Below, piece by piece: positions 33,269 to 62,877 of a DNA stretch of 64,000 nt (its first letter is position 1; each line of letters begins with the position of its first letter). A model generated the notes under the pieces. It saw only the letters and a program-made list of their open reading frames with translations, had not been told where the DNA came from and did no database searches. The stretch spans positions 224,698 to 288,697 of the IMG/VR virus record IMGVR_UViG_3300020473_000010; one strand, given 5' to 3'. A program made the translations under genes and the position numbers.

Positions 33269-33997
33269 ATGGGGAAAGAAAATAAAAAAATTTTTATAAT
33301 AGGTTTTAATAAATGTGGAACAAGAACGTTATCTAAATATTTTGAAAGCCAAGGTTTAGGCACTTATCATATAGGAAGAGATTGGTATCCGTTTAGTTGT
33401 CAACTAACAGATAATATGGCAAATAGAAAAAAAATATTAGATTCATATGAACATGATGTTTATGCAGATCATGCTTTTTTAGTAAGATACTATAAAAGAC
33501 TGGACAAAGATTATCCTGGAAGTTTATTTATTCTTAACACTAGAGATGTTGATGATTGGCTTATCAGCAGATTAAATCACCATTGGTGCACAATGGTTCC
33601 CGCATATAATGTACGTACTGGTCACAGAAACCTGAATTGGAAACAGTGGGTTGCTGATTGGCGAGTACAGTGGGCAGAGCACCATAAAGATGTTAAAAAG
33701 TTTTTTTCGAATAGGCCGAGTGACTTATTAATTTTTAATATCAATAATGATGACGTACAAAAGATTATTGATTTCTGTTTACCGGATTATAATTTTAATG
33801 AATCGGGGTGGGGCCACTCCGGAGAAACGCTGAAGCGACAGGAGCTTTATTTTTCAAAAATAAATGGGGAAATAGTTAATATCAAGAAACCACCTGAGCG
33901 AGCTCGTCCGTTTGATCCATGGCATATTGAGCTAAAGATGGTAACAACCAGTATTTCTACTAAACATATGATAACTGATCCAAAAGAAGAATTATAA
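33269..33997 (+). CDS. Sulfotransferase family protein
   Basis: IFIIGFNKCGTRTL, YPGSLFILNTRDVDDWLISR, V..FF..RP.DLL. Confidence 0.8.
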   Translation: MGKENKKIFIIGFNKCGTRTLSKYFESQGLGTYHIGRDWYPFSCQLTDNMANRKKILDSYEHDVYADHAFLVRYYKRLDKDYPGSLFILNTRDVDDWLISRLNHHWCTMVPAYNVRTGHRNLNWKQWVADWRVQWAEHHKDVKKFFSNRPSDLLIFNINNDDVQKIIDFCLPDYNFNESGWGHSGETLKRQELYFSKINGEIVNIKKPPERARPFDPWHIELKMVTTSISTKHMITDPKEEL

Positions 33998-52444: not shown

Positions 52445-52660
52445 TCAAACCTTTGAAATTTTCCAACTTTGGAAAATTAATATTTGACCATTAATCCATA
52501 TTTTATATTTCCATTTAGAAAATGATTCTTGATAATTCCAATAATCATAACCCTCTATATCAATAACAATCCCTAATGAGTGGCGAGTACCATTAATTTT
52601 ACACCAAACTAAATCGCCAGGCCTGGCGGTTTCATCCCAGAACGAAGCACTATCTCGCAA
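52445..52660 (-). CDS. Small 'GDLV' SH3-like protein (start uncertain)
   Basis: PGDLVW...LGIVIDI...YKIWINGQI. Confidence 0.55.
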   Translation of the reverse strand: MRDSASFWDETARPGDLVWCKINGTRHSLGIVIDIEGYDYWNYQESFSKWKYKIWINGQILIFQSWKISKV

Positions 52661-53223
52661 ATGTGCTCTAGTCTTTCTATATGTTCGTACGCATCCCAGG
52701 GATTATCTCCTATTGCACAGACTCCATGATTGGCTTGCCCAACTATATCATAAATAAGTATGTTTGAATCTGGACTTCTCATTGCGTTGAAGGTTGCTCG
52801 AGCTAATTCAGGACTAGTCACTGGAAGGACTGGAACGCTTGGACCGACTCTTGTATATCGACTTACTTCTGGAAATTCGGCAGATAATTTTTGTAAATCC
52901 CAGCCGGCGTATATGGCTGCAATAATGTTTGTTGGGTGAAGATGAACTACTGAGCGGGTGGGTTTATGATATCTTTGGAGAAGGAGATGCATATCTAGCT
53001 CGCCAGAGGGGGTTGCTTCTGGTTTACCTATAATATTGCAACCAGCGGGAGTTATACGAACTTTCATAATGTGTTCTGGGTGGAGTATGGTTTTGCGCCA
53101 CCCTGATGGGGTTATATATAAAGTCTTAGAATTCCTTCTGCACAGGCTTATGTTCCCATCACGAGTTGTGATCCAGCCTTTTTCGTAAGCACGCCTCATG
53201 ACGTCACCCATTGCTGTTAGCAT
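52609..53223 (-). CDS. Class II aldolase/adducin family protein
   Basis: DGNIS, ITPSG, PSGEL.MH, VVHLHP, NHGV. Confidence 0.88.
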   Translation of the reverse strand: MLTAMGDVMRRAYEKGWITTRDGNISLCRRNSKTLYITPSGWRKTILHPEHIMKVRITPAGCNIIGKPEATPSGELDMHLLLQRYHKPTRSVVHLHPTNIIAAIYAGWDLQKLSAEFPEVSRYTRVGPSVPVLPVTSPELARATFNAMRSPDSNILIYDIVGQANHGVCAIGDNPWDAYEHIERLEHICEIVLRSGMKPPGLAI

Positions 53224-53429
53224 TATAATCTCCTTAAATTTGGCGATACAACATAAATTAATTCGTTGTTAATTAATAATTCATATTCATTATTTATGAT
53301 TTCATTAATTATTCCAATAGAACCAAATATTTCAATATTTGGTATTTGAACAGTTCCAAACTGTTCTGAGAGTATATAGCAAAACTCAGTCTCTAAAACC
53401 TGAATTAAATCTCCGGTACAATATTGCAT
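53223..53429 (-). CDS. Small 'GDL' SH3-like protein
   Basis: TGDLIQV...IGIINEI...YELLINNELIYV. Confidence 0.55.
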   Translation of the reverse strand: MQYCTGDLIQVLETEFCYILSEQFGTVQIPNIEIFGSIGIINEIINNEYELLINNELIYVVSPNLRRL

Positions 53430-53504
53430 AGTACACCCTTGAAGGTTGGTAAGTTATGCATTTATTGTACCGAGTATAGATGTATTGTTCAGCCTTTACT
53501 TTGC

Positions 53505-53738
53505 TTAAACAAATGCTATATTATAATCTATAGTGCTGGAAGTAGATTTTTTCATATATTGTTCTCTGACAAACCAAAAACTGTTTTCACAATAAATTAT
53601 CCACCCATCTTTAATAGGGGGATTATCGGGATGGACATCTGGATCACCTTTGTCCATTATAATTCCTACTCCCTCTAGTAGAGGTACGCCATGTATTTCA
53701 ACCCGTACCTCTACTAAGTCTCCTATTCTTAAATTCAT
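53505..53738 (-). CDS. Small 'GDLV' SH3-like protein
   Basis: LRIGDLVEV...GVGIIMD; ATGA-coupled start at 53738. Confidence 0.6.
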   Translation of the reverse strand: MNLRIGDLVEVRVEIHGVPLLEGVGIIMDKGDPDVHPDNPPIKDGWIIYCENSFWFVREQYMKKSTSSTIDYNIAFV

Positions 53739-53998
53739 TTTTTGTTTAATGGATGAAAAACTTCCAAATATCCTATAGGGCAAATTAATTTAATTAATCT
53801 CCAACCCATGAACGGAGATTTTATAAGTTCTTTAGATTTTGGGGGGCATATTCCTTCAAACGCAACTACTACATGGTTTCCACCATCGTCAGACTGCCAT
53901 AAAATTCGATATTCTTCGCCAATATCTTCAATGCAAATTTCATGTAAAGCATCTTCAACTTCGGACTTAGGAGCTTTTTGCTTTTGGTCATATTTCAT
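53735..53998 (-). CDS. Hypothetical protein
   Basis: 87-aa ORF in the operon. Confidence 0.6.
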   Translation of the reverse strand: MKYDQKQKAPKSEVEDALHEICIEDIGEEYRILWQSDDGGNHVVVAFEGICPPKSKELIKSPFMGWRLIKLICPIGYLEVFHPLNKK

Positions 53999-54002
53999 GT
54001 TG

Positions 54003-54776
54003 TTACCTATTAATTATTTCGGATATAATTTCTATTGTTTTTTGGGGCCCTGATGTTTCAAAACCATTTTGTCCTGCCATTTGATAAGCTTCAAAATCAT
54101 TGCCAGAAGGAGAACAACGGTCACCAACAAAATATATTTTTTGGTATTCTTTAAAAACTTTCCAAGCATATGTTTTATCCCAACCCTTAGGATAAATATC
54201 AAAAGAAGTTTCTCCCCCCATTTTGATTGTAATATCTGCAAATGCTGGACTTGATAATAATCTGCGATGCATAGCTTTTCGTATCTTGTATTTATTGTCT
54301 AATTCTATCCAGATTTTTCTTTCGTCATCTGATGCATCTCGTCCAATTGGACACCAGTTAACCATGGATCCTCTATATTGAATAAAAGTACCAGATAAAG
54401 GGATGCTTGAGCCTCCCAAACTATACCTTACAGCTGTTTGCGAATCTAAAAGTGCTTTAATTATATTGCCATATTTAGAAACCCCAATATGGTTTTTCAT
54501 ATCAAGTTCATATTTTTTTTCAAAACCCTTACTTGAAAATTTGTAATATTTTGTTCCATTACAAGGTAAAATATGGAGACTTTCGTAATTAATTAAACAG
54601 ATATCCCACATAATATCACATTGCTCTTTTATGTAATCTAAATCTGACCCGGATACAATTGCGATTTCAAAATTATTGTTCTGTAGCTCTTCTAGAGATC
54701 TTAGAATGTTTCTTTCCATTCTTTTCCTAGGCGGTGTTAGTGTACCATCCATGTCAAGCAAAACTACTTTTTTCAT
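54003..54776 (-). CDS. Eukaryote-type phosphomannomutase (HAD-IIB)
   Basis: DMDGTLTPPR, VSGSD, NG, GTFIQYR..M.N.CPIGR.AS, GG..SFDIYPKGWDKTY, FVGD....GNDFE. Confidence 0.9.
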   Translation of the reverse strand: MKKVVLLDMDGTLTPPRKRMERNILRSLEELQNNNFEIAIVSGSDLDYIKEQCDIMWDICLINYESLHILPCNGTKYYKFSSKGFEKKYELDMKNHIGVSKYGNIIKALLDSQTAVRYSLGGSSIPLSGTFIQYRGSMVNWCPIGRDASDDERKIWIELDNKYKIRKAMHRRLLSSPAFADITIKMGGETSFDIYPKGWDKTYAWKVFKEYQKIYFVGDRCSPSGNDFEAYQMAGQNGFETSGPQKTIEIISEIINR

Positions 54777-54861
54777 TTTTCCCCCAAAATAAAGATAAAA
54801 TTTGTTCTTTCTTTATCATACTTAATTTTATAGAGTTGTGAACCTGGAGGGAGGATATGGT

Positions 54862-55605
54862 GTGGAGAAAAAGAATTTAATAAGATTTCTAATCTTAACA
54901 TTGATGTTATGTTTTGTTGTTTCTTGTTGTGGTAGAAAAGTTCCAAAAATTAGTGTATCGATGCATGCAGACCATCCTATTGATCAGGAGTCTGCATTTT
55001 TTATTCTAAGAGAATTCAAAGTACCTGGAGATGAACCAGAGATTGGTGGCGAAGTATTAGCTGCAATGTCTGGCACTGGAGGAGCTATTAGAGGAGGCAA
55101 AGGCTGGACAGATGTTTTGACTGCTGGGCATGTTTGTATGCCAAATCCTGAAATGGTTTTTTTAGATGAAGAATTTACAGTCTACGATGTAAATGGAAAT
55201 TTTTACCCGGGTGATGTAATAGCTATTCAACACTGGGGTGATTTGTGTTTAATCAGAATTCAATTTGAGAAAAACTTAATTCCTTTAGCTTCTAAAAACC
55301 CGACAAGAGGAGACAAGGTTTATTATGCTGGATATCCAGCTGGAATGTATAAGCCTGGTTTTTTGCATTTTTACGATGGTTATTATTCGGGTGTAGATGG
55401 CTCAAGAAACGGGATCTGGAGTATACCCGCTGTTGGAGGAAGCAGTGGTGGATTTGTAGTTAACAGAAGAGGAGAATTGGTCGGTGTTGTTTCTGCAGTG
55501 TTAACAGAATTTCACCATATGACTTTTGGCGCGACTGTTGAACAAATTGATAGCTTCTTGAAAAATACGACAACATGTACACCGGCAGACCCGTGTGAAT
55601 TATAA
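54862..55605 (+). CDS. Trypsin-like serine protease with signal/lipoprotein N-terminus
   Basis: LTAGH, DLCL, GYP, GGSSGG; hydrophobic leader ending VSCC; GTG start after GGAGG. Confidence 0.85.
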   Translation: MEKKNLIRFLILTLMLCFVVSCCGRKVPKISVSMHADHPIDQESAFFILREFKVPGDEPEIGGEVLAAMSGTGGAIRGGKGWTDVLTAGHVCMPNPEMVFLDEEFTVYDVNGNFYPGDVIAIQHWGDLCLIRIQFEKNLIPLASKNPTRGDKVYYAGYPAGMYKPGFLHFYDGYYSGVDGSRNGIWSIPAVGGSSGGFVVNRRGELVGVVSAVLTEFHHMTFGATVEQIDSFLKNTTTCTPADPCEL

Positions 55606-55643
55606 AAAAATGAGCGCAGGAGAGAAACAAAACCTGCGCTCAT
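55604..55643 (-). terminator. Intrinsic terminator, 11-bp stem, 12-nt loop, U tail
   Basis: ATGAGCGCAGG-N12-CCTGCGCTCAT followed by a T run on the - strand. Confidence 0.8.
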
Positions 55644-55685
55644 AAATCAATCAACAACCAAGAAGCTGTTTCTCTTTTTTATCTA
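55604..55685 (-). ncRNA. Candidate ~80-nt small RNA
   Basis: Consensus promoter at 55690-55718 followed after ~80 nt by a terminator, with no plausible ORF; 9-nt complementarity between the 5' end and the loop. Confidence 0.45.
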
Positions 55686-55689
55686 ATTT

Positions 55690-55718
55690 ATTATATAGCA
55701 ATAAAACTTATTTTACAA
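55690..55718 (-). promoter_or_regulatory. Orphan promoter TTGTAA-N17-TATAAT
   Basis: Best consensus match of the promoter family; no downstream CDS on its strand before the terminator. Confidence 0.65.
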
Positions 55719-55722
55719 AGTT

Positions 55723-57141
55723 TTATCTTTTTCCTGGTTTCTCTTTCATTTTGATATGAAAATCTCGAGAAGATTTTGAGAACTGAAGTTGGCCGGTTGG
55801 AACTATTACCCAACCTCTTTTAAGTTTGTTAAATCCGCCGGGATCCGGAGCATATCCATCTGTTAGTACCAAGTAGCCATCAAATCGACCTGAATGTTTA
55901 TTAGCATGATCTTGGACACATCTAAAATCAGTACCACCACAGCGGGTTCTTGTAAGGTTAACTTGGCGACCTTTCCGGAGAACACGCTCACTATTTTCAT
56001 CGACTTCAGTGTCAAAATTAAACAATGTAAACTCAACTCTTTTTGCCAAACCATCTAACTCAGAAGCAAGAAGTTCGAGGTCACTATCAGAAACTGACCC
56101 TGATTGGTCGAGATAAACAGCGATATTAGCTTTATAATCTCTAAAAGCACCTGGGTGAATACCCGGATATTTACGGTGCATTCTTCTAATCGAAGAAGCC
56201 CTGTCAGCGCGGCGGGTCATTCCGCAAAACTGTTTAAGAACAGATTGCCACGGGATATCTTTTGATATCATTTTTCTAAGGTTCTTTTGCATTGCGGCGC
56301 CAACAGAGCCCCAACTATTTGAACCATCACATTTCTTAACTGCTTCTTCAAGAGCCTGTTTAATCTGACCTTTAACCAATTCGCGCTGCTCATCTGAAAG
56401 TTGGTCCCAACCTTCATGGCTGTCCATTCCGTCATCACCGGAACCCGGAACAACTGTAACAGCATTGCCATCTTGATCAACAAGATTTCCGTTTTCGTCG
56501 ACTTTAACATCTCCATCGGCAAGGGCTTGTGCAAGAGATTTGCCGTTCATTTTTTCACTAGACTCTATTGCATTTTTTACATCATCGTCATTCATAAGTT
56601 CCGCAAAATACCATTCAGAATGCTTTTCTTTTGGAAATGATGCAATCTTTGCAGATACCATTGCATATCGTTGCGCAGCGTCATCACCCATTTGAGCAAT
56701 CTGTTCTGGTGTAAGAGGAGTAAATGCTTTACCTGGTATCAAACCACCTTCAGGCAATTCTTCTTCAGCAATCAGAGAATTAATCGCCAAATCAGTAGCA
56801 TAATTCCAAATAATGTGGGGGTCGCGTCGGCGGGTTGTAGTATGATCAAAAACCAAGTGATAACACTCATGCTTAAGTAAGCCTTTAACTTGAGCAGGGG
56901 TAAGACCAGCAAGAAACTTAGGGTTCCACCAAAAACGAACTTCACCATCTTTTGCCAAAACACCGGCTGTGGGGATTGCTTCTGTTTTGATTTTTTGAAT
57001 ACCTCGAAGAACTCGGGCGAAAAAAGGTTCATCCCACATTAATCTAATGAGGTGTGGACTTAAGTCAAAGGCGTTAGCTTCAGCTTCCGTGACTTCTCGG
57101 GCGGTCAGGGCGCTGTTGGCGGTTGTTGATTTGTTGGACAT
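55723..57141 (-). CDS. DUF2201-type putative metallopeptidase with vWA domain
   Basis: PTAGV, LKHECYH (HExxH), WNYATDLAINS, HEGW, PWQ..L, MIDAS DQSGSV, GGTDF, LTDGY. Confidence 0.88.
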   Translation of the reverse strand: MSNKSTTANSALTAREVTEAEANAFDLSPHLIRLMWDEPFFARVLRGIQKIKTEAIPTAGVLAKDGEVRFWWNPKFLAGLTPAQVKGLLKHECYHLVFDHTTTRRRDPHIIWNYATDLAINSLIAEEELPEGGLIPGKAFTPLTPEQIAQMGDDAAQRYAMVSAKIASFPKEKHSEWYFAELMNDDDVKNAIESSEKMNGKSLAQALADGDVKVDENGNLVDQDGNAVTVVPGSGDDGMDSHEGWDQLSDEQRELVKGQIKQALEEAVKKCDGSNSWGSVGAAMQKNLRKMISKDIPWQSVLKQFCGMTRRADRASSIRRMHRKYPGIHPGAFRDYKANIAVYLDQSGSVSDSDLELLASELDGLAKRVEFTLFNFDTEVDENSERVLRKGRQVNLTRTRCGGTDFRCVQDHANKHSGRFDGYLVLTDGYAPDPGGFNKLKRGWVIVPTGQLQFSKSSRDFHIKMKEKPGKR

Positions 57142-57172
57142 GTTTACTCCAGATGAACGTTAATGTTTATTA

Positions 57173-57213
57173 GTTACACTAATAATTTAATTCAATTTTA
57201 ATGTTTCTACACA
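57173..57213 (-). promoter_or_regulatory. Promoter TGTGTAG-N16-TTAAATTA-N4-TGTAA
   Basis: One of three copies with identical spacing. Confidence 0.7.
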
Positions 57214-57214
57214 A

Positions 57215-57445
57215 TTATTCAGCACTTTTTTTATTTTCTTTTTCAACAGTTTCTAGTGTCCTTGGAGAGAAAGAATCAATCCAGCCATCAATATAAACTA
57301 AAAGTTTATCCCAATCTGAGTTTTGGGTTGAACGTGTAATTACATCAACAACTATTCCAATTGGTTTTTTTACTGATATTGGCGCCTTGTTTCGAAAGAC
57401 ATCTTTCAAGGTAACGAGATCCCCTTTCTCGTATCTATTGTCCAT
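57215..57445 (-). CDS. Small 'GDLV' SH3-like protein
   Basis: YEKGDLVTL...IGIVVDV...LLVYIDGWI. Confidence 0.62.
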   Translation of the reverse strand: MDNRYEKGDLVTLKDVFRNKAPISVKKPIGIVVDVITRSTQNSDWDKLLVYIDGWIDSFSPRTLETVEKENKKSAE

Positions 57446-57761
57446 GGACTCTCTCCAAGAGTTTAAATGAGCTTCCCACCAATACTACCTCTTTGCCTTC
57501 GACTAAAAACCAGTGGTGTTTTCTAGTACCGTCAATTAACCAATCATCATGTGTATGTCCTAAATACATCATCACAGGATGTTTATTATCAAGTTTTTGA
57601 TTTTTTGTTAAATATCCTTTCCATAATTTTATATGCGTTATATTGTCGGGGGTTTTTTCTAGTAGGGTTTTAAATCCATAATTTGTGTTTTTTACTTGGT
57701 TCCATATAGCACTACTAATAGGACGGTATAATTCACCAATTTTCATATGCTGTACATACAT
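57435..57761 (-). CDS. Hypothetical protein (diverged SH3-like)
   Basis: GAGGTG SD; MKIGELY...WFLVEGKEV. Confidence 0.6.
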   Translation of the reverse strand: MYVQHMKIGELYRPISSAIWNQVKNTNYGFKTLLEKTPDNITHIKLWKGYLTKNQKLDNKHPVMMYLGHTHDDWLIDGTRKHHWFLVEGKEVVLVGSSFKLLERVHGQ

Positions 57762-57801
57762 TTATCACCTCAATATAATTATACCTAAATTTCTAGAAAT
57801 G

Positions 57802-57839
57802 AATAAAGGGAAATTCAGAATTCTGAATTTCCCTTTATT
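57802..57839. repeat. Perfect 38-bp palindrome (possible terminator or cruciform)
   Basis: AATAAAGGGAAATTCAGAA|TTCTGAATTTCCCTTTATT. Confidence 0.85.
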
Positions 57840-57870
57840 ATTATATAAGATAATAGTGAAGTTAGTAGTT

Positions 57871-58977
57871 TTATTTTCTACCAAGTTCTCTTGAAGCTTG
57901 AACTGCTTTCACAACATCTTGGCCCATAAGTTTATGCATTTTTTGGATATTCTTGATATTGGCAGACTGAGTGATTGAGTTCCAGACTTGAACCATCATC
58001 TCTCCGGGAAGATTGAGAGCGAAGGCTGAGAGATTTTTACACTCTTTTTGGGTCCAAGAATTCTCTTTACAGTGGTGACCGATTTTATCGATGACGCCAT
58101 TCAAGGTAGAGTTTGGAAGATTAGTAATGTCTTTTTTACTGACTTTACCTTTGAGAACATCTTCGGCAGAAACTTGGCGTTCATATTCTTTAATGAACTG
58201 GCAGAAAGAGATAGCAGCTTCAGTGCCGACCATACCCAAAAGAAGGGCATACATGCCGTCTGGGTTTTCTGAACCAGCGACTGAAGATGGTGCCATATCC
58301 ATATGAAGAAGACATTCATTAACGCGGTGCCAAGAAGCTGGATTAGGACAAACTGTGCCGGGTTCGACAGATGAAGGGTCAACTCGCAGATGAGCTGGGT
58401 TTTGATTAATGAAATCAATCAATACTGAGTCGATATCATTATCACGGGCCCAAGAAATCCAATCTTCTGTAGATGGCTCAATGTCAGCAACCCAAAATCG
58501 ACGAAGAAGTGCTGGGTCCATTTCATTAACATCATACTCTGAACCAAAGTTGATGGCGGCGATTACGCGGGTTTCTGGGTGAAGACGATATGGAGTACCA
58601 TTTTTGTCATTACCAAGTTCTCGGTCGAGAACCAACTGGAAGAAAGACTGTTGAACGCCAGGAAGAGAGCGATTAAGCTCATCAAGCATGAGAACAACCG
58701 GCTCATTGCACGCCCGAACGAACCATGAAGGCATGCAAAAAGTCATAACACCGGTTTCTTTCATAGACTCAATGTCCGGATATCCGCCAACATCTCCTTC
58801 AGACATGGTTGAACCGCGAACATCGACGAATGGGATATTGTGATGGTCGGCGATTTGACGAGCAAGGTGAGATTTACCAACACCAGTTGGGCCGCGCATA
58901 AGAACTGCGATATGAGGGGGAAGGACAGGGGCCACTTTGTTGAAGGTGGCGATAGTGATAGGTGTCTTAGCTGACAT
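57871..58977 (-). CDS. MoxR-like AAA+ ATPase
   Basis: GPTGVGKS, LMLDELNR, QLVLDR, AAIN, MDPALLRRF, P.SW. Confidence 0.9.
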   Translation of the reverse strand: MSAKTPITIATFNKVAPVLPPHIAVLMRGPTGVGKSHLARQIADHHNIPFVDVRGSTMSEGDVGGYPDIESMKETGVMTFCMPSWFVRACNEPVVLMLDELNRSLPGVQQSFFQLVLDRELGNDKNGTPYRLHPETRVIAAINFGSEYDVNEMDPALLRRFWVADIEPSTEDWISWARDNDIDSVLIDFINQNPAHLRVDPSSVEPGTVCPNPASWHRVNECLLHMDMAPSSVAGSENPDGMYALLLGMVGTEAAISFCQFIKEYERQVSAEDVLKGKVSKKDITNLPNSTLNGVIDKIGHHCKENSWTQKECKNLSAFALNLPGEMMVQVWNSITQSANIKNIQKMHKLMGQDVVKAVQASRELGRK

Positions 58978-59838: not shown

Positions 59839-60354
59839 TTAAATCCAGTCAAAGCTCGAATCATCTGATTTTTTCGGTGGGTTTTCTTCTGTTTCTTTTT
59901 TATCGCCTTCAATGATTTTTAGTTTTGGCTCACCTTTTTTTGTTGGTTTGGTTGGTGGCCTGGGCGGTACTGGGGCATCCCAGTTTTTCTCGGTGGGCAT
60001 GCCAGTAGTAAATGACTGAAACATTTCGTTAAGATCTGCTTCAATCTCCTTGTTGGTTGATGTAGGGCTTCCTAACCAATCTAGACACTGAAGCCACCCT
60101 TTGTCAGTCCATTTTTCAAGCTGACCTTGTAAAGAATAACCGTCCGGGTCTGCATCTGATGGGTCACCACCCATCATCATGATGAATTCTGCGGCGGTCA
60201 TGCGCGTAATTCTAATTCTATAACGCCCGGGTGTAGAATATTCTGCATGGGGATACTTTACAGAATAAGCCCACATAGACTCATACGATTCTGGGTCGTC
60301 AGTCTCTCCGCTTGCTCCAATTTGATATAGTTTTCTAGATCTATAGTCAGCCAT
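59839..60354 (-). CDS. Hypothetical protein with Pro-rich C-terminus
   Basis: GGAGAG SD; promoter TTGTAC-N17-TAATTT at 60376-60404. Confidence 0.65.
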   Translation of the reverse strand: MADYRSRKLYQIGASGETDDPESYESMWAYSVKYPHAEYSTPGRYRIRITRMTAAEFIMMMGGDPSDADPDGYSLQGQLEKWTDKGWLQCLDWLGSPTSTNKEIEADLNEMFQSFTTGMPTEKNWDAPVPPRPPTKPTKKGEPKLKIIEGDKKETEENPPKKSDDSSFDWI

Positions 60355-62355: not shown

Positions 62356-62395
62356 TAAAAGTGGGGGCGAGCCCCAACCACAAAGCTCGCCCCCA
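62356..62395 (-). terminator. Intrinsic terminator after hsp20, 11-bp stem, 12-nt loop
   Basis: TGGGGGCGAGC-N12-GCTCGCCCCCA then CTTTTATT on the - strand. Confidence 0.75.
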
Positions 62396-62427
62396 AGCAA
62401 CCCTCAACCATGGTTGCCTACACGGAG

Positions 62428-62877
62428 TTAATCTACTGTAATAACTCTACGTGTCTCCTTTACACCCGACGTCGGTACATCAATATGAAGAATGCCTGCT
62501 TCGTATCTTGCAGTAACACTGTCCACATTTGTTGCATCCGGAAGGGTCCAGCTACGAGTGAATGAGCTATAGCTCCACTCTCGGGCCACAACAGAACTCT
62601 CATAATTCTTTCCATCTTCAGTGTTAACTGTAATAGAAAGTACATTATTATCGATACTCATTTCGAAATCATCCCGGGAATACCCAGGCGCCGCGAGCTC
62701 GATTTGATAGCCTCCGTCTTTTTTCACAATATTCGCACGAGGAGTCATCTCAGAGATGCTCCGACGAGAATTGCGAGTAGATGTAGAAGGAAGAAAAATA
62801 TCGTCAAAATTTGTTAATAGATCAAATGGATTGTTGAAAAAAGAATTTTTAATTGTTGGATAAAGTCTTGTACTCAT
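62428..62877 (-). CDS. Small heat-shock protein Hsp20
   Basis: PRANI, IELAAPG, F.RSWTLP, A.YEAGIL.I.VP. Confidence 0.93.
   Translation of the reverse strand: MSTRLYPTIKNSFFNNPFDLLTNFDDIFLPSTSTRNSRRSISEMTPRANIVKKDGGYQIELAAPGYSRDDFEMSIDNNVLSITVNTEDGKNYESSVVAREWSYSSFTRSWTLPDATNVDSVTARYEAGILHIDVPTSGVKETRRVITVD

What the first reader, a model, noticed from the sequence alone, without database searches (positions are those of the whole stretch)
55604..55718. Candidate small RNA with its own promoter, a pseudoknot and an anti-Shine-Dalgarno loop
Seen: TTGTAA-N17-TATAAT points into ~80 nt without a plausible ORF, ending in an 11-bp stem and U tail. The 5' AGAGAAACA (55667-75) is exactly complementary to nine loop bases (55621-29). 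The loop plus stem edge reads UUUCUCUCCUG, complementary over nine nt to the RBS of the gene starting at 60354 (GGAGAGAAA) and to that of the 33269 sulfotransferase (AGGAGAGAA). Inference: a switchable translational-repressor sRNA, protein sponge or decoy (type III antitoxin mimics are also short pseudoknots).
Basis: partly seen in the sequence, partly recalled or inferred. Interest (0 to 1): 0.62.

Follow-up and report, generated by a model that had tools for sequence, protein, structure and literature searches.

The report
Conserved small RNA gene in marine jumbo phages
The 115-base spacer between two converging genes of an uncultured marine jumbo phage most likely holds a small non-coding RNA gene with its own promoter and terminator, kept in at least three related phage lineages, but its proposed pseudoknot and named targets are not established.

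Summary
The window is the last 64 kb of a 288.7-kb marine phage contig. The element lies on the minus strand, between a DUF2201/VWA gene (55723-57141, minus) and a converging trypsin-like protease gene (54838-55605, plus).

I found four homologous copies in three lineages of related uncultured phages. Three results support a real small-RNA gene:
- The -35 and -10 boxes stay 16-17 nt apart while the spacer between them is scrambled (1 of 16 identical in one close pair).
- The transcribed core is the best-conserved 60 nt in a 1.6-kb alignment.
- The terminator stem shows 4 compensatory pairs of 9, with none broken.

No reading frame is conserved, there is no Rfam match, and the genome holds one copy.

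The 9-bp pairing between the 5' segment and the loop is unusual in the window (P about 0.005-0.012 against shuffles). Relatives keep only 6-7 bp including G-U pairs, which is not beyond chance, so the pseudoknot is possible but unproven.

The loop's 3' half (UUUCUC) is conserved and complementary to Shine-Dalgarno sequences. That complementarity is generic. In the one relative I could check, the counterpart of the 60354 gene has no complementarity to that phage's loop.

No RNA data were available. The type III antitoxin idea is rejected.

The parts
55713..55718 (-). -35 hexamer TTGTAA
   Evidence: The homologous boxes TATACA (L083, L079) and CATACA (L003, L092) sit 16-17 nt from the -10 box.
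55690..55695 (-). -10 hexamer TATAAT
   Evidence: It is TATAAT in L003 and L092 and TAATAT in L083 and L079. The box is kept while the 16-17-nt spacer is scrambled.
55683..55684 (-). Predicted transcription start, 6-7 nt after the -10 box (inferred, not mapped)
   Evidence: Inferred from promoter geometry. No RNA run holds this phage.
55667..55675 (-). 5' purine-rich segment AGAGAAACA, complementary to the loop and part of an A-rich leader
   Evidence: (I2). The equivalent segments are (gc)AGAGAC in L083/L079 and AAAGGUC in L003/L092.
55644..55662 (-). Conserved G/U-rich tract CUUGGUUGUUGAUUGAUUU, i.e. (UUGR)n, unpaired in the consensus fold
   Evidence: Searches show CTTGRTTG..TTG..GRTT conserved in all five sequences.
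55633..55643 (-). Terminator stem, 5' arm AUGAGCGCAGG
   Evidence: (I1). Covariation is shown.
55621..55632 (-). 12-nt loop UUUUGUUUCUCU; the 3' half UUUCUC is conserved and complementary to Shine-Dalgarno sequences
55610..55620 (-). Terminator stem, 3' arm CCUGCGCUCAU
55604..55609 (-). U tail (six U after the stem), overlapping the protease stop codon at 55603-55605
   Evidence: A T6-T8 tail is present in all homologues.
55723..57141 (-). Upstream DUF2201_N/VWA-like gene; read-through from its operon would end at the same terminator
54838..55605 (+). Converging trypsin-like protease gene; no U tract follows the hairpin on its strand

Best explanation
Window 55604-55718 (minus strand) is most likely a small non-coding RNA gene of about 80 nt (80-97 nt in relatives). 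It sits in a variable slot of a marine jumbo-phage genome, tail to tail with a protease gene.

A sigma-70-type promoter starts transcription near 55683/55684. An 11-bp G+C-rich hairpin with a U tail ends it at about 55604-55606. The same hairpin also ends read-through transcripts from the upstream AAA-ATPase/VWA operon. That layout resembles the 3'-UTR-embedded sRNAs that have their own promoter.

The parts under selection are:
- a purine-rich 5' leader;
- a single-stranded (UUGR)n tract just before the hairpin;
- the pyrimidine-rich 3' half of the unusually large terminator loop (UUUCUC).

Most likely mode of action (inferred): a trans-acting regulator that uses the loop and/or the G/U tract to pair with mRNAs. 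The loop suits purine-rich ribosome-binding sites. An RNA chaperone may help, since the A-R-N leader, the U-rich tract and the U tail look like an Hfq-type module.

In the window's phage the 5' segment can fold back on the loop (9 bp). That would mask the loop. Whether this forms is not shown.

Shown: the anatomy, conservation, promoter footprint, stem covariation and absence of a conserved ORF. Inferred: transcription itself, the start site, the targets and the mechanism.
For: **Homologues.** Four copies in three lineages, at the same place just 3' of the protease stop:
- L083:3327-3462 and L079:1081-1217 (VWA protein 86 % identical to the window's);
- L003:4700-4824 and L092:3227-3346 (VWA 78 %).

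My covariance model scores the four other copies at 82-86 bits and the window copy at 88.7, but all five were used to build it, so these scores are not independent evidence. The best hit elsewhere is 23 bits or less.

**Promoter footprint.**
- L003 vs L092: the -35 and -10 boxes and an upstream A/T block are identical, and the 16-nt spacer is 1 of 16 identical.
- L083 vs L079: flanks are 90-100 % identical and the transcribed part is identical apart from a one-base indel, yet 12 spacer bases are wholly replaced.
- Box spacing is 16-17 nt in all five.

**Purifying selection.** The core is 90-96 % identical between L003 and L092, against about 50-80 % in the flanking coding DNA.

**Terminator.** All 45 cells of the 9 pairs are paired. 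Four pairs carry compensatory double changes. 0 of 500 shuffles reach the covariation score, and slid controls give 42-64 % paired. The U tail is on this strand only.

**Non-coding.** The only shared frame (the UUG in the G/U tract) runs 4, 11, 11, 23 or more than 30 codons. A 1-nt indel shifts it between the near-identical L079 and L083 (read).

**Loop.** Its 3' half UUUCUC is kept in all lineages, while the 5' half changes in length and sequence. The phage's Shine-Dalgarno consensus is AAGGAGAA. Start regions are enriched for complements to the loop.
Against: - There is no transcript evidence. No RNA run holds the phage, and the DNA contigs of four marine runs are simply identical to the window.
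- A promoter match of this quality is expected about 0.06 times in such a spacer by chance.
- Only five sequences from three lineages are known, all from uncultured phages with unknown hosts.
- The element is absent from many close relatives. They carry small ORFs, no spacer, or a plain tetraloop terminator at that place.
- No target stands out. A duplex scan of 362 start regions gave a best z of about -3. The one testable target counterpart is not complementary.
- The pseudoknot is not supported beyond chance in the relatives.
Confidence: 0.6

Rival explanations
1. The element is only the intrinsic terminator and 3' UTR of the VWA operon. The promoter-like boxes do nothing. The conserved tract and loop serve mRNA 3'-end stability or termination efficiency.
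For: - The hairpin is the first terminator after the VWA stop codon in the window, L083 and L079.
- Relatives L087 and L093 have a plain terminator at the same place.
- A promoter match has an appreciable chance rate.
- There are no RNA data.
Against: - The -35 and -10 boxes keep correct spacing while the spacer is scrambled in two independent close pairs.
- In L003 and L092 the element follows a different gene (an 88-aa ORF) yet keeps the same boxes.
- A plain terminator needs neither a 9-16-nt loop with a conserved half nor a conserved upstream tract.
Confidence: 0.2
2. It is a cis-antisense regulator of the converging protease gene, in the manner of phage lambda OOP RNA. The protease mRNA has no U tract after the hairpin and reads into the element. 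The two RNAs form a duplex that is cut or stabilised.
For: - The element always abuts the protease stop codon.
- On the plus strand the hairpin is followed by AAAUCAAUC, which is not a U tract.
- OOP is a short RNA with its own promoter pO and terminator tO. It converges on cII and acts through RNase III-dependent cleavage (PMC5869508).
Against: - The RNA ends at the stop codon, so it overlaps no protease coding sequence, whereas 52 nt of OOP overlap cII.
- Pure cis-antisense action needs no sequence conservation, yet the core is better conserved than the flanking genes.
- The element occupies the only intergenic gap there, so adjacency is not informative.
Confidence: 0.15
3. It is a translation-coupled attenuator. 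A mini-ORF starts at the conserved UUG (55661-55659; MVVD-stop in the window) and brings a ribosome up to or into the terminator stem. That would allow read-through antisense to the protease gene.
For: - The UUG is conserved in all five sequences.
- The frame reaches within 3 nt of the hairpin, or into it, in every sequence.
- In the window a purine-rich box lies 9 nt upstream of the UUG (read).
Against: - Neither the peptide nor its length is conserved (4 to more than 30 codons).
- The purine box is 11 nt away in L003 and about 27 nt away in L083/L079.
- No gene lies downstream on that strand for about 830 nt.
Confidence: 0.04
4. It is a type III antitoxin mimic, a protein sponge or a decoy pseudoknot.
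For: It is short and has pseudoknot potential. The repeated UUGR units could bind a protein.
Against: - There are no 34-36-nt tandem repeats.
- No ToxN/AbiQ-type gene lies beside it; the neighbours are a VWA protein and a protease.
- It is single copy and has no Rfam match.
Confidence: 0.04

Closest known systems
3'-UTR-embedded sRNAs with their own promoter that share the mRNA's terminator (DapZ and MicL type; from my own knowledge of the enterobacterial literature)
   Same: The promoter sits right at the end of the upstream coding gene. The RNA is short. The intrinsic terminator is shared with the upstream operon. There is a U-rich tract plus a U tail.
   Different: This element is in a phage, with no sequence relationship to those RNAs. 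The promoter lies after the stop codon rather than inside the CDS. The candidate seed is in the terminator loop or a G/U tract. Expression is untested.
Phage lambda OOP RNA (PMC5869508)
   Same: A phage-encoded short RNA with its own -35/-10 promoter and hairpin terminator, transcribed towards the 3' end of a converging gene.
   Different: 52 nt of OOP overlap the cII coding sequence. This RNA stops at the protease stop codon. There is no sequence similarity, and its strong sequence conservation argues for more than cis pairing.
sRNAs that block ribosome-binding sites with C/U-rich hairpin loops, including terminator-hairpin loops (S. aureus RNAIII hairpins 13/14, RsaE; from my own knowledge)
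   Same: An unpaired pyrimidine-rich loop complementary to Shine-Dalgarno sequences, carried on the terminator hairpin.
   Different: The motif here is UUUCUC(U)CC rather than UCCC. The last CC lies inside the stem. No conserved target was found, and there is no homology.
Ordinary intrinsic terminator between converging genes
   Same: A G+C-rich stem with a U tail, at the end of an operon and facing a converging gene.
   Different: The loop is 12 nt (9-16 nt in relatives) with a conserved half. There is a conserved upstream tract and conserved promoter boxes. It terminates on one strand only.

Membership tests
Intrinsic (Rho-independent) terminator | G+C-rich hairpin directly followed by a U tract on the transcribed strand | tested here: met
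   An 11-bp stem (7 G-C pairs) plus U6-7 on the minus strand. This is conserved, with 4 compensatory pairs. The tool's terminator scan missed it only because that scan allows loops of 8 nt at most.
Independently transcribed bacterial or phage sRNA gene | Own promoter upstream of the RNA | tested here: met
   A 10-of-12 consensus match. The boxes are conserved at 16-17 nt spacing with scrambled spacers. This is computational evidence only.
Independently transcribed bacterial or phage sRNA gene | Mapped primary 5' end and a discrete transcript | not testable with these tools
   No RNA run holds the phage, and only contigs of DNA runs were available.
Independently transcribed bacterial or phage sRNA gene | No conserved protein-coding frame | tested here: met
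   Frames of 4, 11, 11, 23 and more than 30 codons. An indel shifts the frame between L079 and L083.
H-type pseudoknot (5' segment paired with the hairpin loop) | Complementarity between the loop and an outside segment, beyond chance | tested here: met
   Window only: 9 Watson-Crick pairs, P = 0.005-0.012 against dinucleotide shuffles. This is not corrected for the 64-kb scan.
H-type pseudoknot (5' segment paired with the hairpin loop) | Pairing conserved or covarying in homologues | tested here: inconclusive
   Relatives keep 6 bp (L083, L079) or 7 bp (L003, L092) including G-U pairs, P = 0.1-0.8. A hand-made gap-free register gives four double changes between the window and L003, but MAFFT alignments do not reproduce that register. 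Both partners are invariant between L003 and L092 while the neighbouring loop bases vary.
Type III toxin-antitoxin antitoxin RNA (ToxI-like) | Tandem repeats of about 34-36 nt next to a ToxN/AbiQ-type endoribonuclease gene | tested here: not met
   Single unit with no tandem repeat and one copy per genome. The neighbours are DUF2201/VWA and Trypsin_2 proteins.
Any Rfam family | Match at the family's gathering score | tested here: not met
   The best overlapping hits are L20_leader at 16.7 bits (gathering score 58.7) and SCARNA7 at 15.5 bits (gathering score 65).
Cis-antisense RNA of the OOP type | Transcript overlaps the coding sequence of the converging gene | tested here: not met
   The U tail overlaps only the stop codon at 55603-55605. 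Overlap with a protease 3' UTR is possible but untested.
Shine-Dalgarno-blocking sRNA | Target complementarity conserved in related genomes | tested here: not met
   The counterpart of the 60354 gene in the L003 phage has 4 nt of complement to that phage's loop. This is a single comparison; the sulfotransferase has no counterpart on that partial contig.
Hfq-type binding module | U-rich tract before the terminator hairpin, 3' oligo-U, and A-R-N repeats | not testable with these tools
   The sequence features are present in the window. The host and its chaperones are unknown.

The most novel reading that the evidence does not exclude
The RNA is a self-masking anti-Shine-Dalgarno riboregulator kept by a group of marine jumbo phages. 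The conserved pyrimidine loop of its terminator binds purine-rich ribosome-binding sites of phage or host mRNAs. Its own 5' purine segment mimics a Shine-Dalgarno sequence and folds onto the loop as a pseudoknot. The RNA would then switch between a closed form and a target-binding or ribosome-binding form. In the hand-made alignment register, the pairing partners change in a compensatory way between lineages.
Probability: 0.1. Interest if true: 0.7.

Novelty: new member of a known kind. Interest (0 to 1): 0.45.

Why it matters
Few regulatory RNAs are known from lytic or jumbo phages, and almost none from uncultured marine phages. This candidate rests on comparative evidence rather than on a single sequence: a promoter footprint, stem covariation, and better conservation than the neighbouring genes. 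It is a concrete, short, testable entry point into RNA-based regulation in marine jumbo phages. It also shows an accessory genome slot that holds either small proteins or an RNA gene. It is not a new kind of system.

Tried and rejected
- **Rfam:** scan of 54500-57000 at E up to 10 found nothing relevant.
- **GenBank phages:** blastn with 2.4 kb found no match.
- **Sequencing runs:** only DNA runs hold the phage. The contigs of four marine runs are identical across the element, so they show no variation and no RNA.
- **Protease-based locus searches:** nothing in IMG/VR, and only the same phage in JGI metagenomes.
- **DNA patterns in IMG/VR:** five patterns were scanned.
  - The stem pattern gave 0 hits.
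  - The TATAATAAATT..CTTGGTTG pattern gave 38 chance hits plus the L003 contig.
  - Two specific tract patterns gave 0 hits and only the L003 contig.
- **Covariance model R1:** one copy in the phage's own genome, and none elsewhere in four related contigs or 29 loci. A 23-bit hit in L015 is an unrelated terminator.
- **Pseudoknot tests in homologues:** not significant. MAFFT would not align the 5' segments in the register the pairing needs. I therefore did not run the pair-counting tool on the pseudoknot and report only a script count.
- **Trans-target scans:** duplex energies against 362 own and 70 L003-phage start regions, and against the protease start region in four phages, gave nothing outstanding or consistent.
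- **Genome-wide terminator survey:** my crude scan found 41 sites with many loop sizes, so a large loop alone is not unique.
- **Rejected readings:** type III antitoxin mimic, small peptide gene, repeated mobile element, and a bidirectional terminator (no U tract on the plus strand).

Full report
**Setting.** The window is bases 224698-288697 of a 288,697-base virus record, estimated 96 % complete. The record comes from marine metagenomes and has about 35 % G+C. The finding lies in the 117-bp spacer between two converging genes. One is a Trypsin_2 protease (54838-55605, plus strand). The other is a DUF2201_N/VWA-like protein (55723-57141, minus strand). The VWA gene is the last gene of a minus-strand array that includes an AAA_5 ATPase (57871-58977). 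A phosphomannomutase gene (54003-54776, minus strand) follows beyond the protease.

On the minus strand:
- TTGTAA-N17-TATAAT lies at 55718-55690, 5 nt after the VWA stop codon.
- An 11-bp perfect stem (55643-55633 / 55620-55610) encloses a 12-nt loop. Six U follow, and they overlap the protease stop codon.
- AGAGAAACA (55675-55667) is the exact complement of loop bases 55629-55621.
- GGAGAGAAA abuts the ATG at 60354 (minus strand). AGGAGAGAA precedes the ATG at 33269 of a Sulfotransfer_4 protein.
- The only ORF listed in the spacer starts inside the hairpin and runs antisense into the protease gene.

**Chance levels.**
- Promoter matches of this quality occur about once per kb of intergenic DNA here, or about 0.06 expected in this spacer on one strand.
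- The 9-bp pairing is reached by 0.5-1.2 % of shuffles.
- The RBS complementarity is generic. The phage's Shine-Dalgarno consensus is AAGGAGAA. Of 264 start regions, 18 carry 7 nt or more of complement to the loop against about 6 expected. Six carry 9-10 nt when later in-frame start codons are also allowed.

**Relatives.** The VWA protein has many relatives in uncultured marine phages. The gene order VWA, then converging protease, then phosphomannomutase is kept, but the slot between the VWA gene and the protease 3' end varies:
- no spacer (L005, L084);
- one or two small ORFs (L002, L086, L006, L088-L091);
- a plain tetraloop terminator (L087, L093);
- the element studied here.

I found the element in four further sequences from two more lineages. 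L083 and L079 have a VWA protein 86 % identical to the window's. L003 (also fetched as L041) and L092 have a VWA protein 78 % identical, and there the element follows an extra 88-aa gene. IMG/VR holds no other copy by five DNA patterns. GenBank phages hold none, and Rfam has no matching family. A covariance model finds one copy in the phage's own genome and none elsewhere in four related contigs.

**Why I take it for a gene.**
- *Promoter footprint.* L003 and L092 share an upstream A/T block, the -35 box TCATACA and the -10 box TATAAT. Their 16-nt spacer is 1 of 16 identical. L083 and L079 are 90-100 % identical in the flanks and identical in the transcribed part apart from a one-base indel. 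Yet 12 bases of the spacer are replaced. All five copies keep 16-17 nt between the boxes.
- *Selection.* The transcribed core is 90-96 % identical between L003 and L092, where the flanking coding DNA is about 50-80 % identical.
- *Terminator.* The stem is paired in all 45 cells. Four of nine pairs carry compensatory double changes. No shuffle of 500 reaches the covariation score, and slid controls fall to 42-64 % paired. The U tail is on this strand only. On the protease strand the hairpin is followed by AAAUCAAUC.
- *No conserved frame.* The frame from the conserved UUG runs 4, 11, 11, 23 or more than 30 codons. It is shifted by an indel between the near-identical L079 and L083.

**What is conserved inside the RNA.**
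- A purine-rich leader (AAAAG..AGAG or AAAGG).
- A G/U tract, CYUUGRUUG(G)UUG..GRUU, that stays unpaired in the consensus fold.
- The stem.
- The 3' half of the loop, UUUCUC. The loop's 5' half varies in length (loop 9-16 nt) and in sequence.

In the window the leader reads as five in-phase A-R-N triplets. The tract next to the hairpin is U-rich and the tail has 6-7 U. This resembles an Hfq-type module. That is a resemblance recalled from the literature, not a test.

**The pseudoknot.**
- In the window the helix is strong: about -11.6 kcal/mol for the duplex.
- It competes with a nested 5' hairpin, AACAGCU/GGUUGUU.
- Relatives can form 6 bp (AGAGAC:GUUUCU) or 7 bp (AAAGGUC:GAUCUUU), each with one G-U pair. 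Purine-rich leaders pair easily with pyrimidine-rich loops, so this is not beyond shuffles (P 0.1-0.8).
- A gap-free register that I set by hand gives four double changes between the window and L003. MAFFT places the 5' segments differently. I count this as suggestive only.
- Supporting details: both partners are invariant between L003 and L092 while adjacent loop bases change. The G-U pairs would be mismatches on the opposite strand.
- An unrelated terminator at the same place in L007-L011 also has loop bases complementary to an upstream segment (P about 0.05).

**Targets.** Nothing stands out in duplex scans of the phage's own start regions or those of the L003 phage, or of the protease leader. 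The counterpart of the 60354 gene in the L003 phage has RBS GGGGGG, with 4 nt of complement to that phage's loop. The general fit of the loop to Shine-Dalgarno sequences is real but unspecific.

**Expression.** No RNA run holds the phage. Contigs from four DNA runs match the window exactly over the element. The start site, and transcription itself, remain inferred.

**Verdict.** This is most likely a conserved phage small-RNA gene with its own promoter and a terminator shared with the upstream operon (confidence about 0.6). Its mechanism is open. Trans pairing through the loop or the G/U tract is my preferred reading. The rivals are a plain 3' UTR with terminator (0.2), an OOP-like cis-antisense role against the protease mRNA (0.15; PMC5869508), a mini-ORF attenuator (0.04), and an antitoxin mimic or protein sponge (0.04). 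It is a new member of a known kind.

Noticed in passing
window 55701-55709 and 55718-55726: A perfect 9-nt inverted repeat with an 8-nt gap spans the VWA stop codon and the -35 hexamer. L092 has a different palindrome, TCATACA-tt-TGTATGA, over its -35 box. These could be operator sites.
   Followed up: no
L083:3327-3350 vs L079:1195-1217: Twelve bases of the promoter spacer are wholly replaced between two contigs that are otherwise 90-100 % identical around it. The L003/L092 spacer is 1 of 16 identical, which is below random expectation.
   Followed up: partly
window 62362-62396 (minus strand): A second terminator with an 11-bp stem and a 12-nt G/U-rich loop (UUUGUGGUUGGG) follows an Hsp20-family gene at 62428-62877. 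Another small hairpin precedes it.
   Followed up: partly
L007:4405-4505 (same sequence in L008-L011): A non-homologous terminator sits at the same genomic place. Its loop ACCCTA(A) is complementary to TTAGGGT about 40 nt upstream (P about 0.05).
   Followed up: partly
slot between the VWA gene and the protease 3' end (window 55606-55722; L002-L007, L083-L093): This is a variable accessory slot. It holds the RNA element, one or two small ORFs (a 71-88-aa family with a conserved GYTWG motif, and a 55-aa ORF), no spacer at all, or a tetraloop terminator.
   Followed up: partly
window 54777-54837 and the equivalent region in L083, L003, L092: The divergent spacer between the phosphomannomutase and protease genes carries a conserved block, (T)ATCATACTTAA(A)TTT. 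This is probably the promoter region of one or both genes.
   Followed up: no
window 29474, 43085, 57264 (plus strand), 60355 (minus strand): GGAGAGAAA occurs 5 times in the window against 0.75 expected. This fits the phage's strong AAGGAGAA-type Shine-Dalgarno usage and hints at a host that uses such sites.
   Followed up: partly
window 52609-58977: The gene neighbourhood is class II aldolase, phosphomannomutase, trypsin-like protease, DUF2201/VWA protein and AAA_5 (MoxR-like) ATPase. A relative (L084) has a Sulfotransfer_2 gene just upstream of the VWA gene.
   Followed up: no
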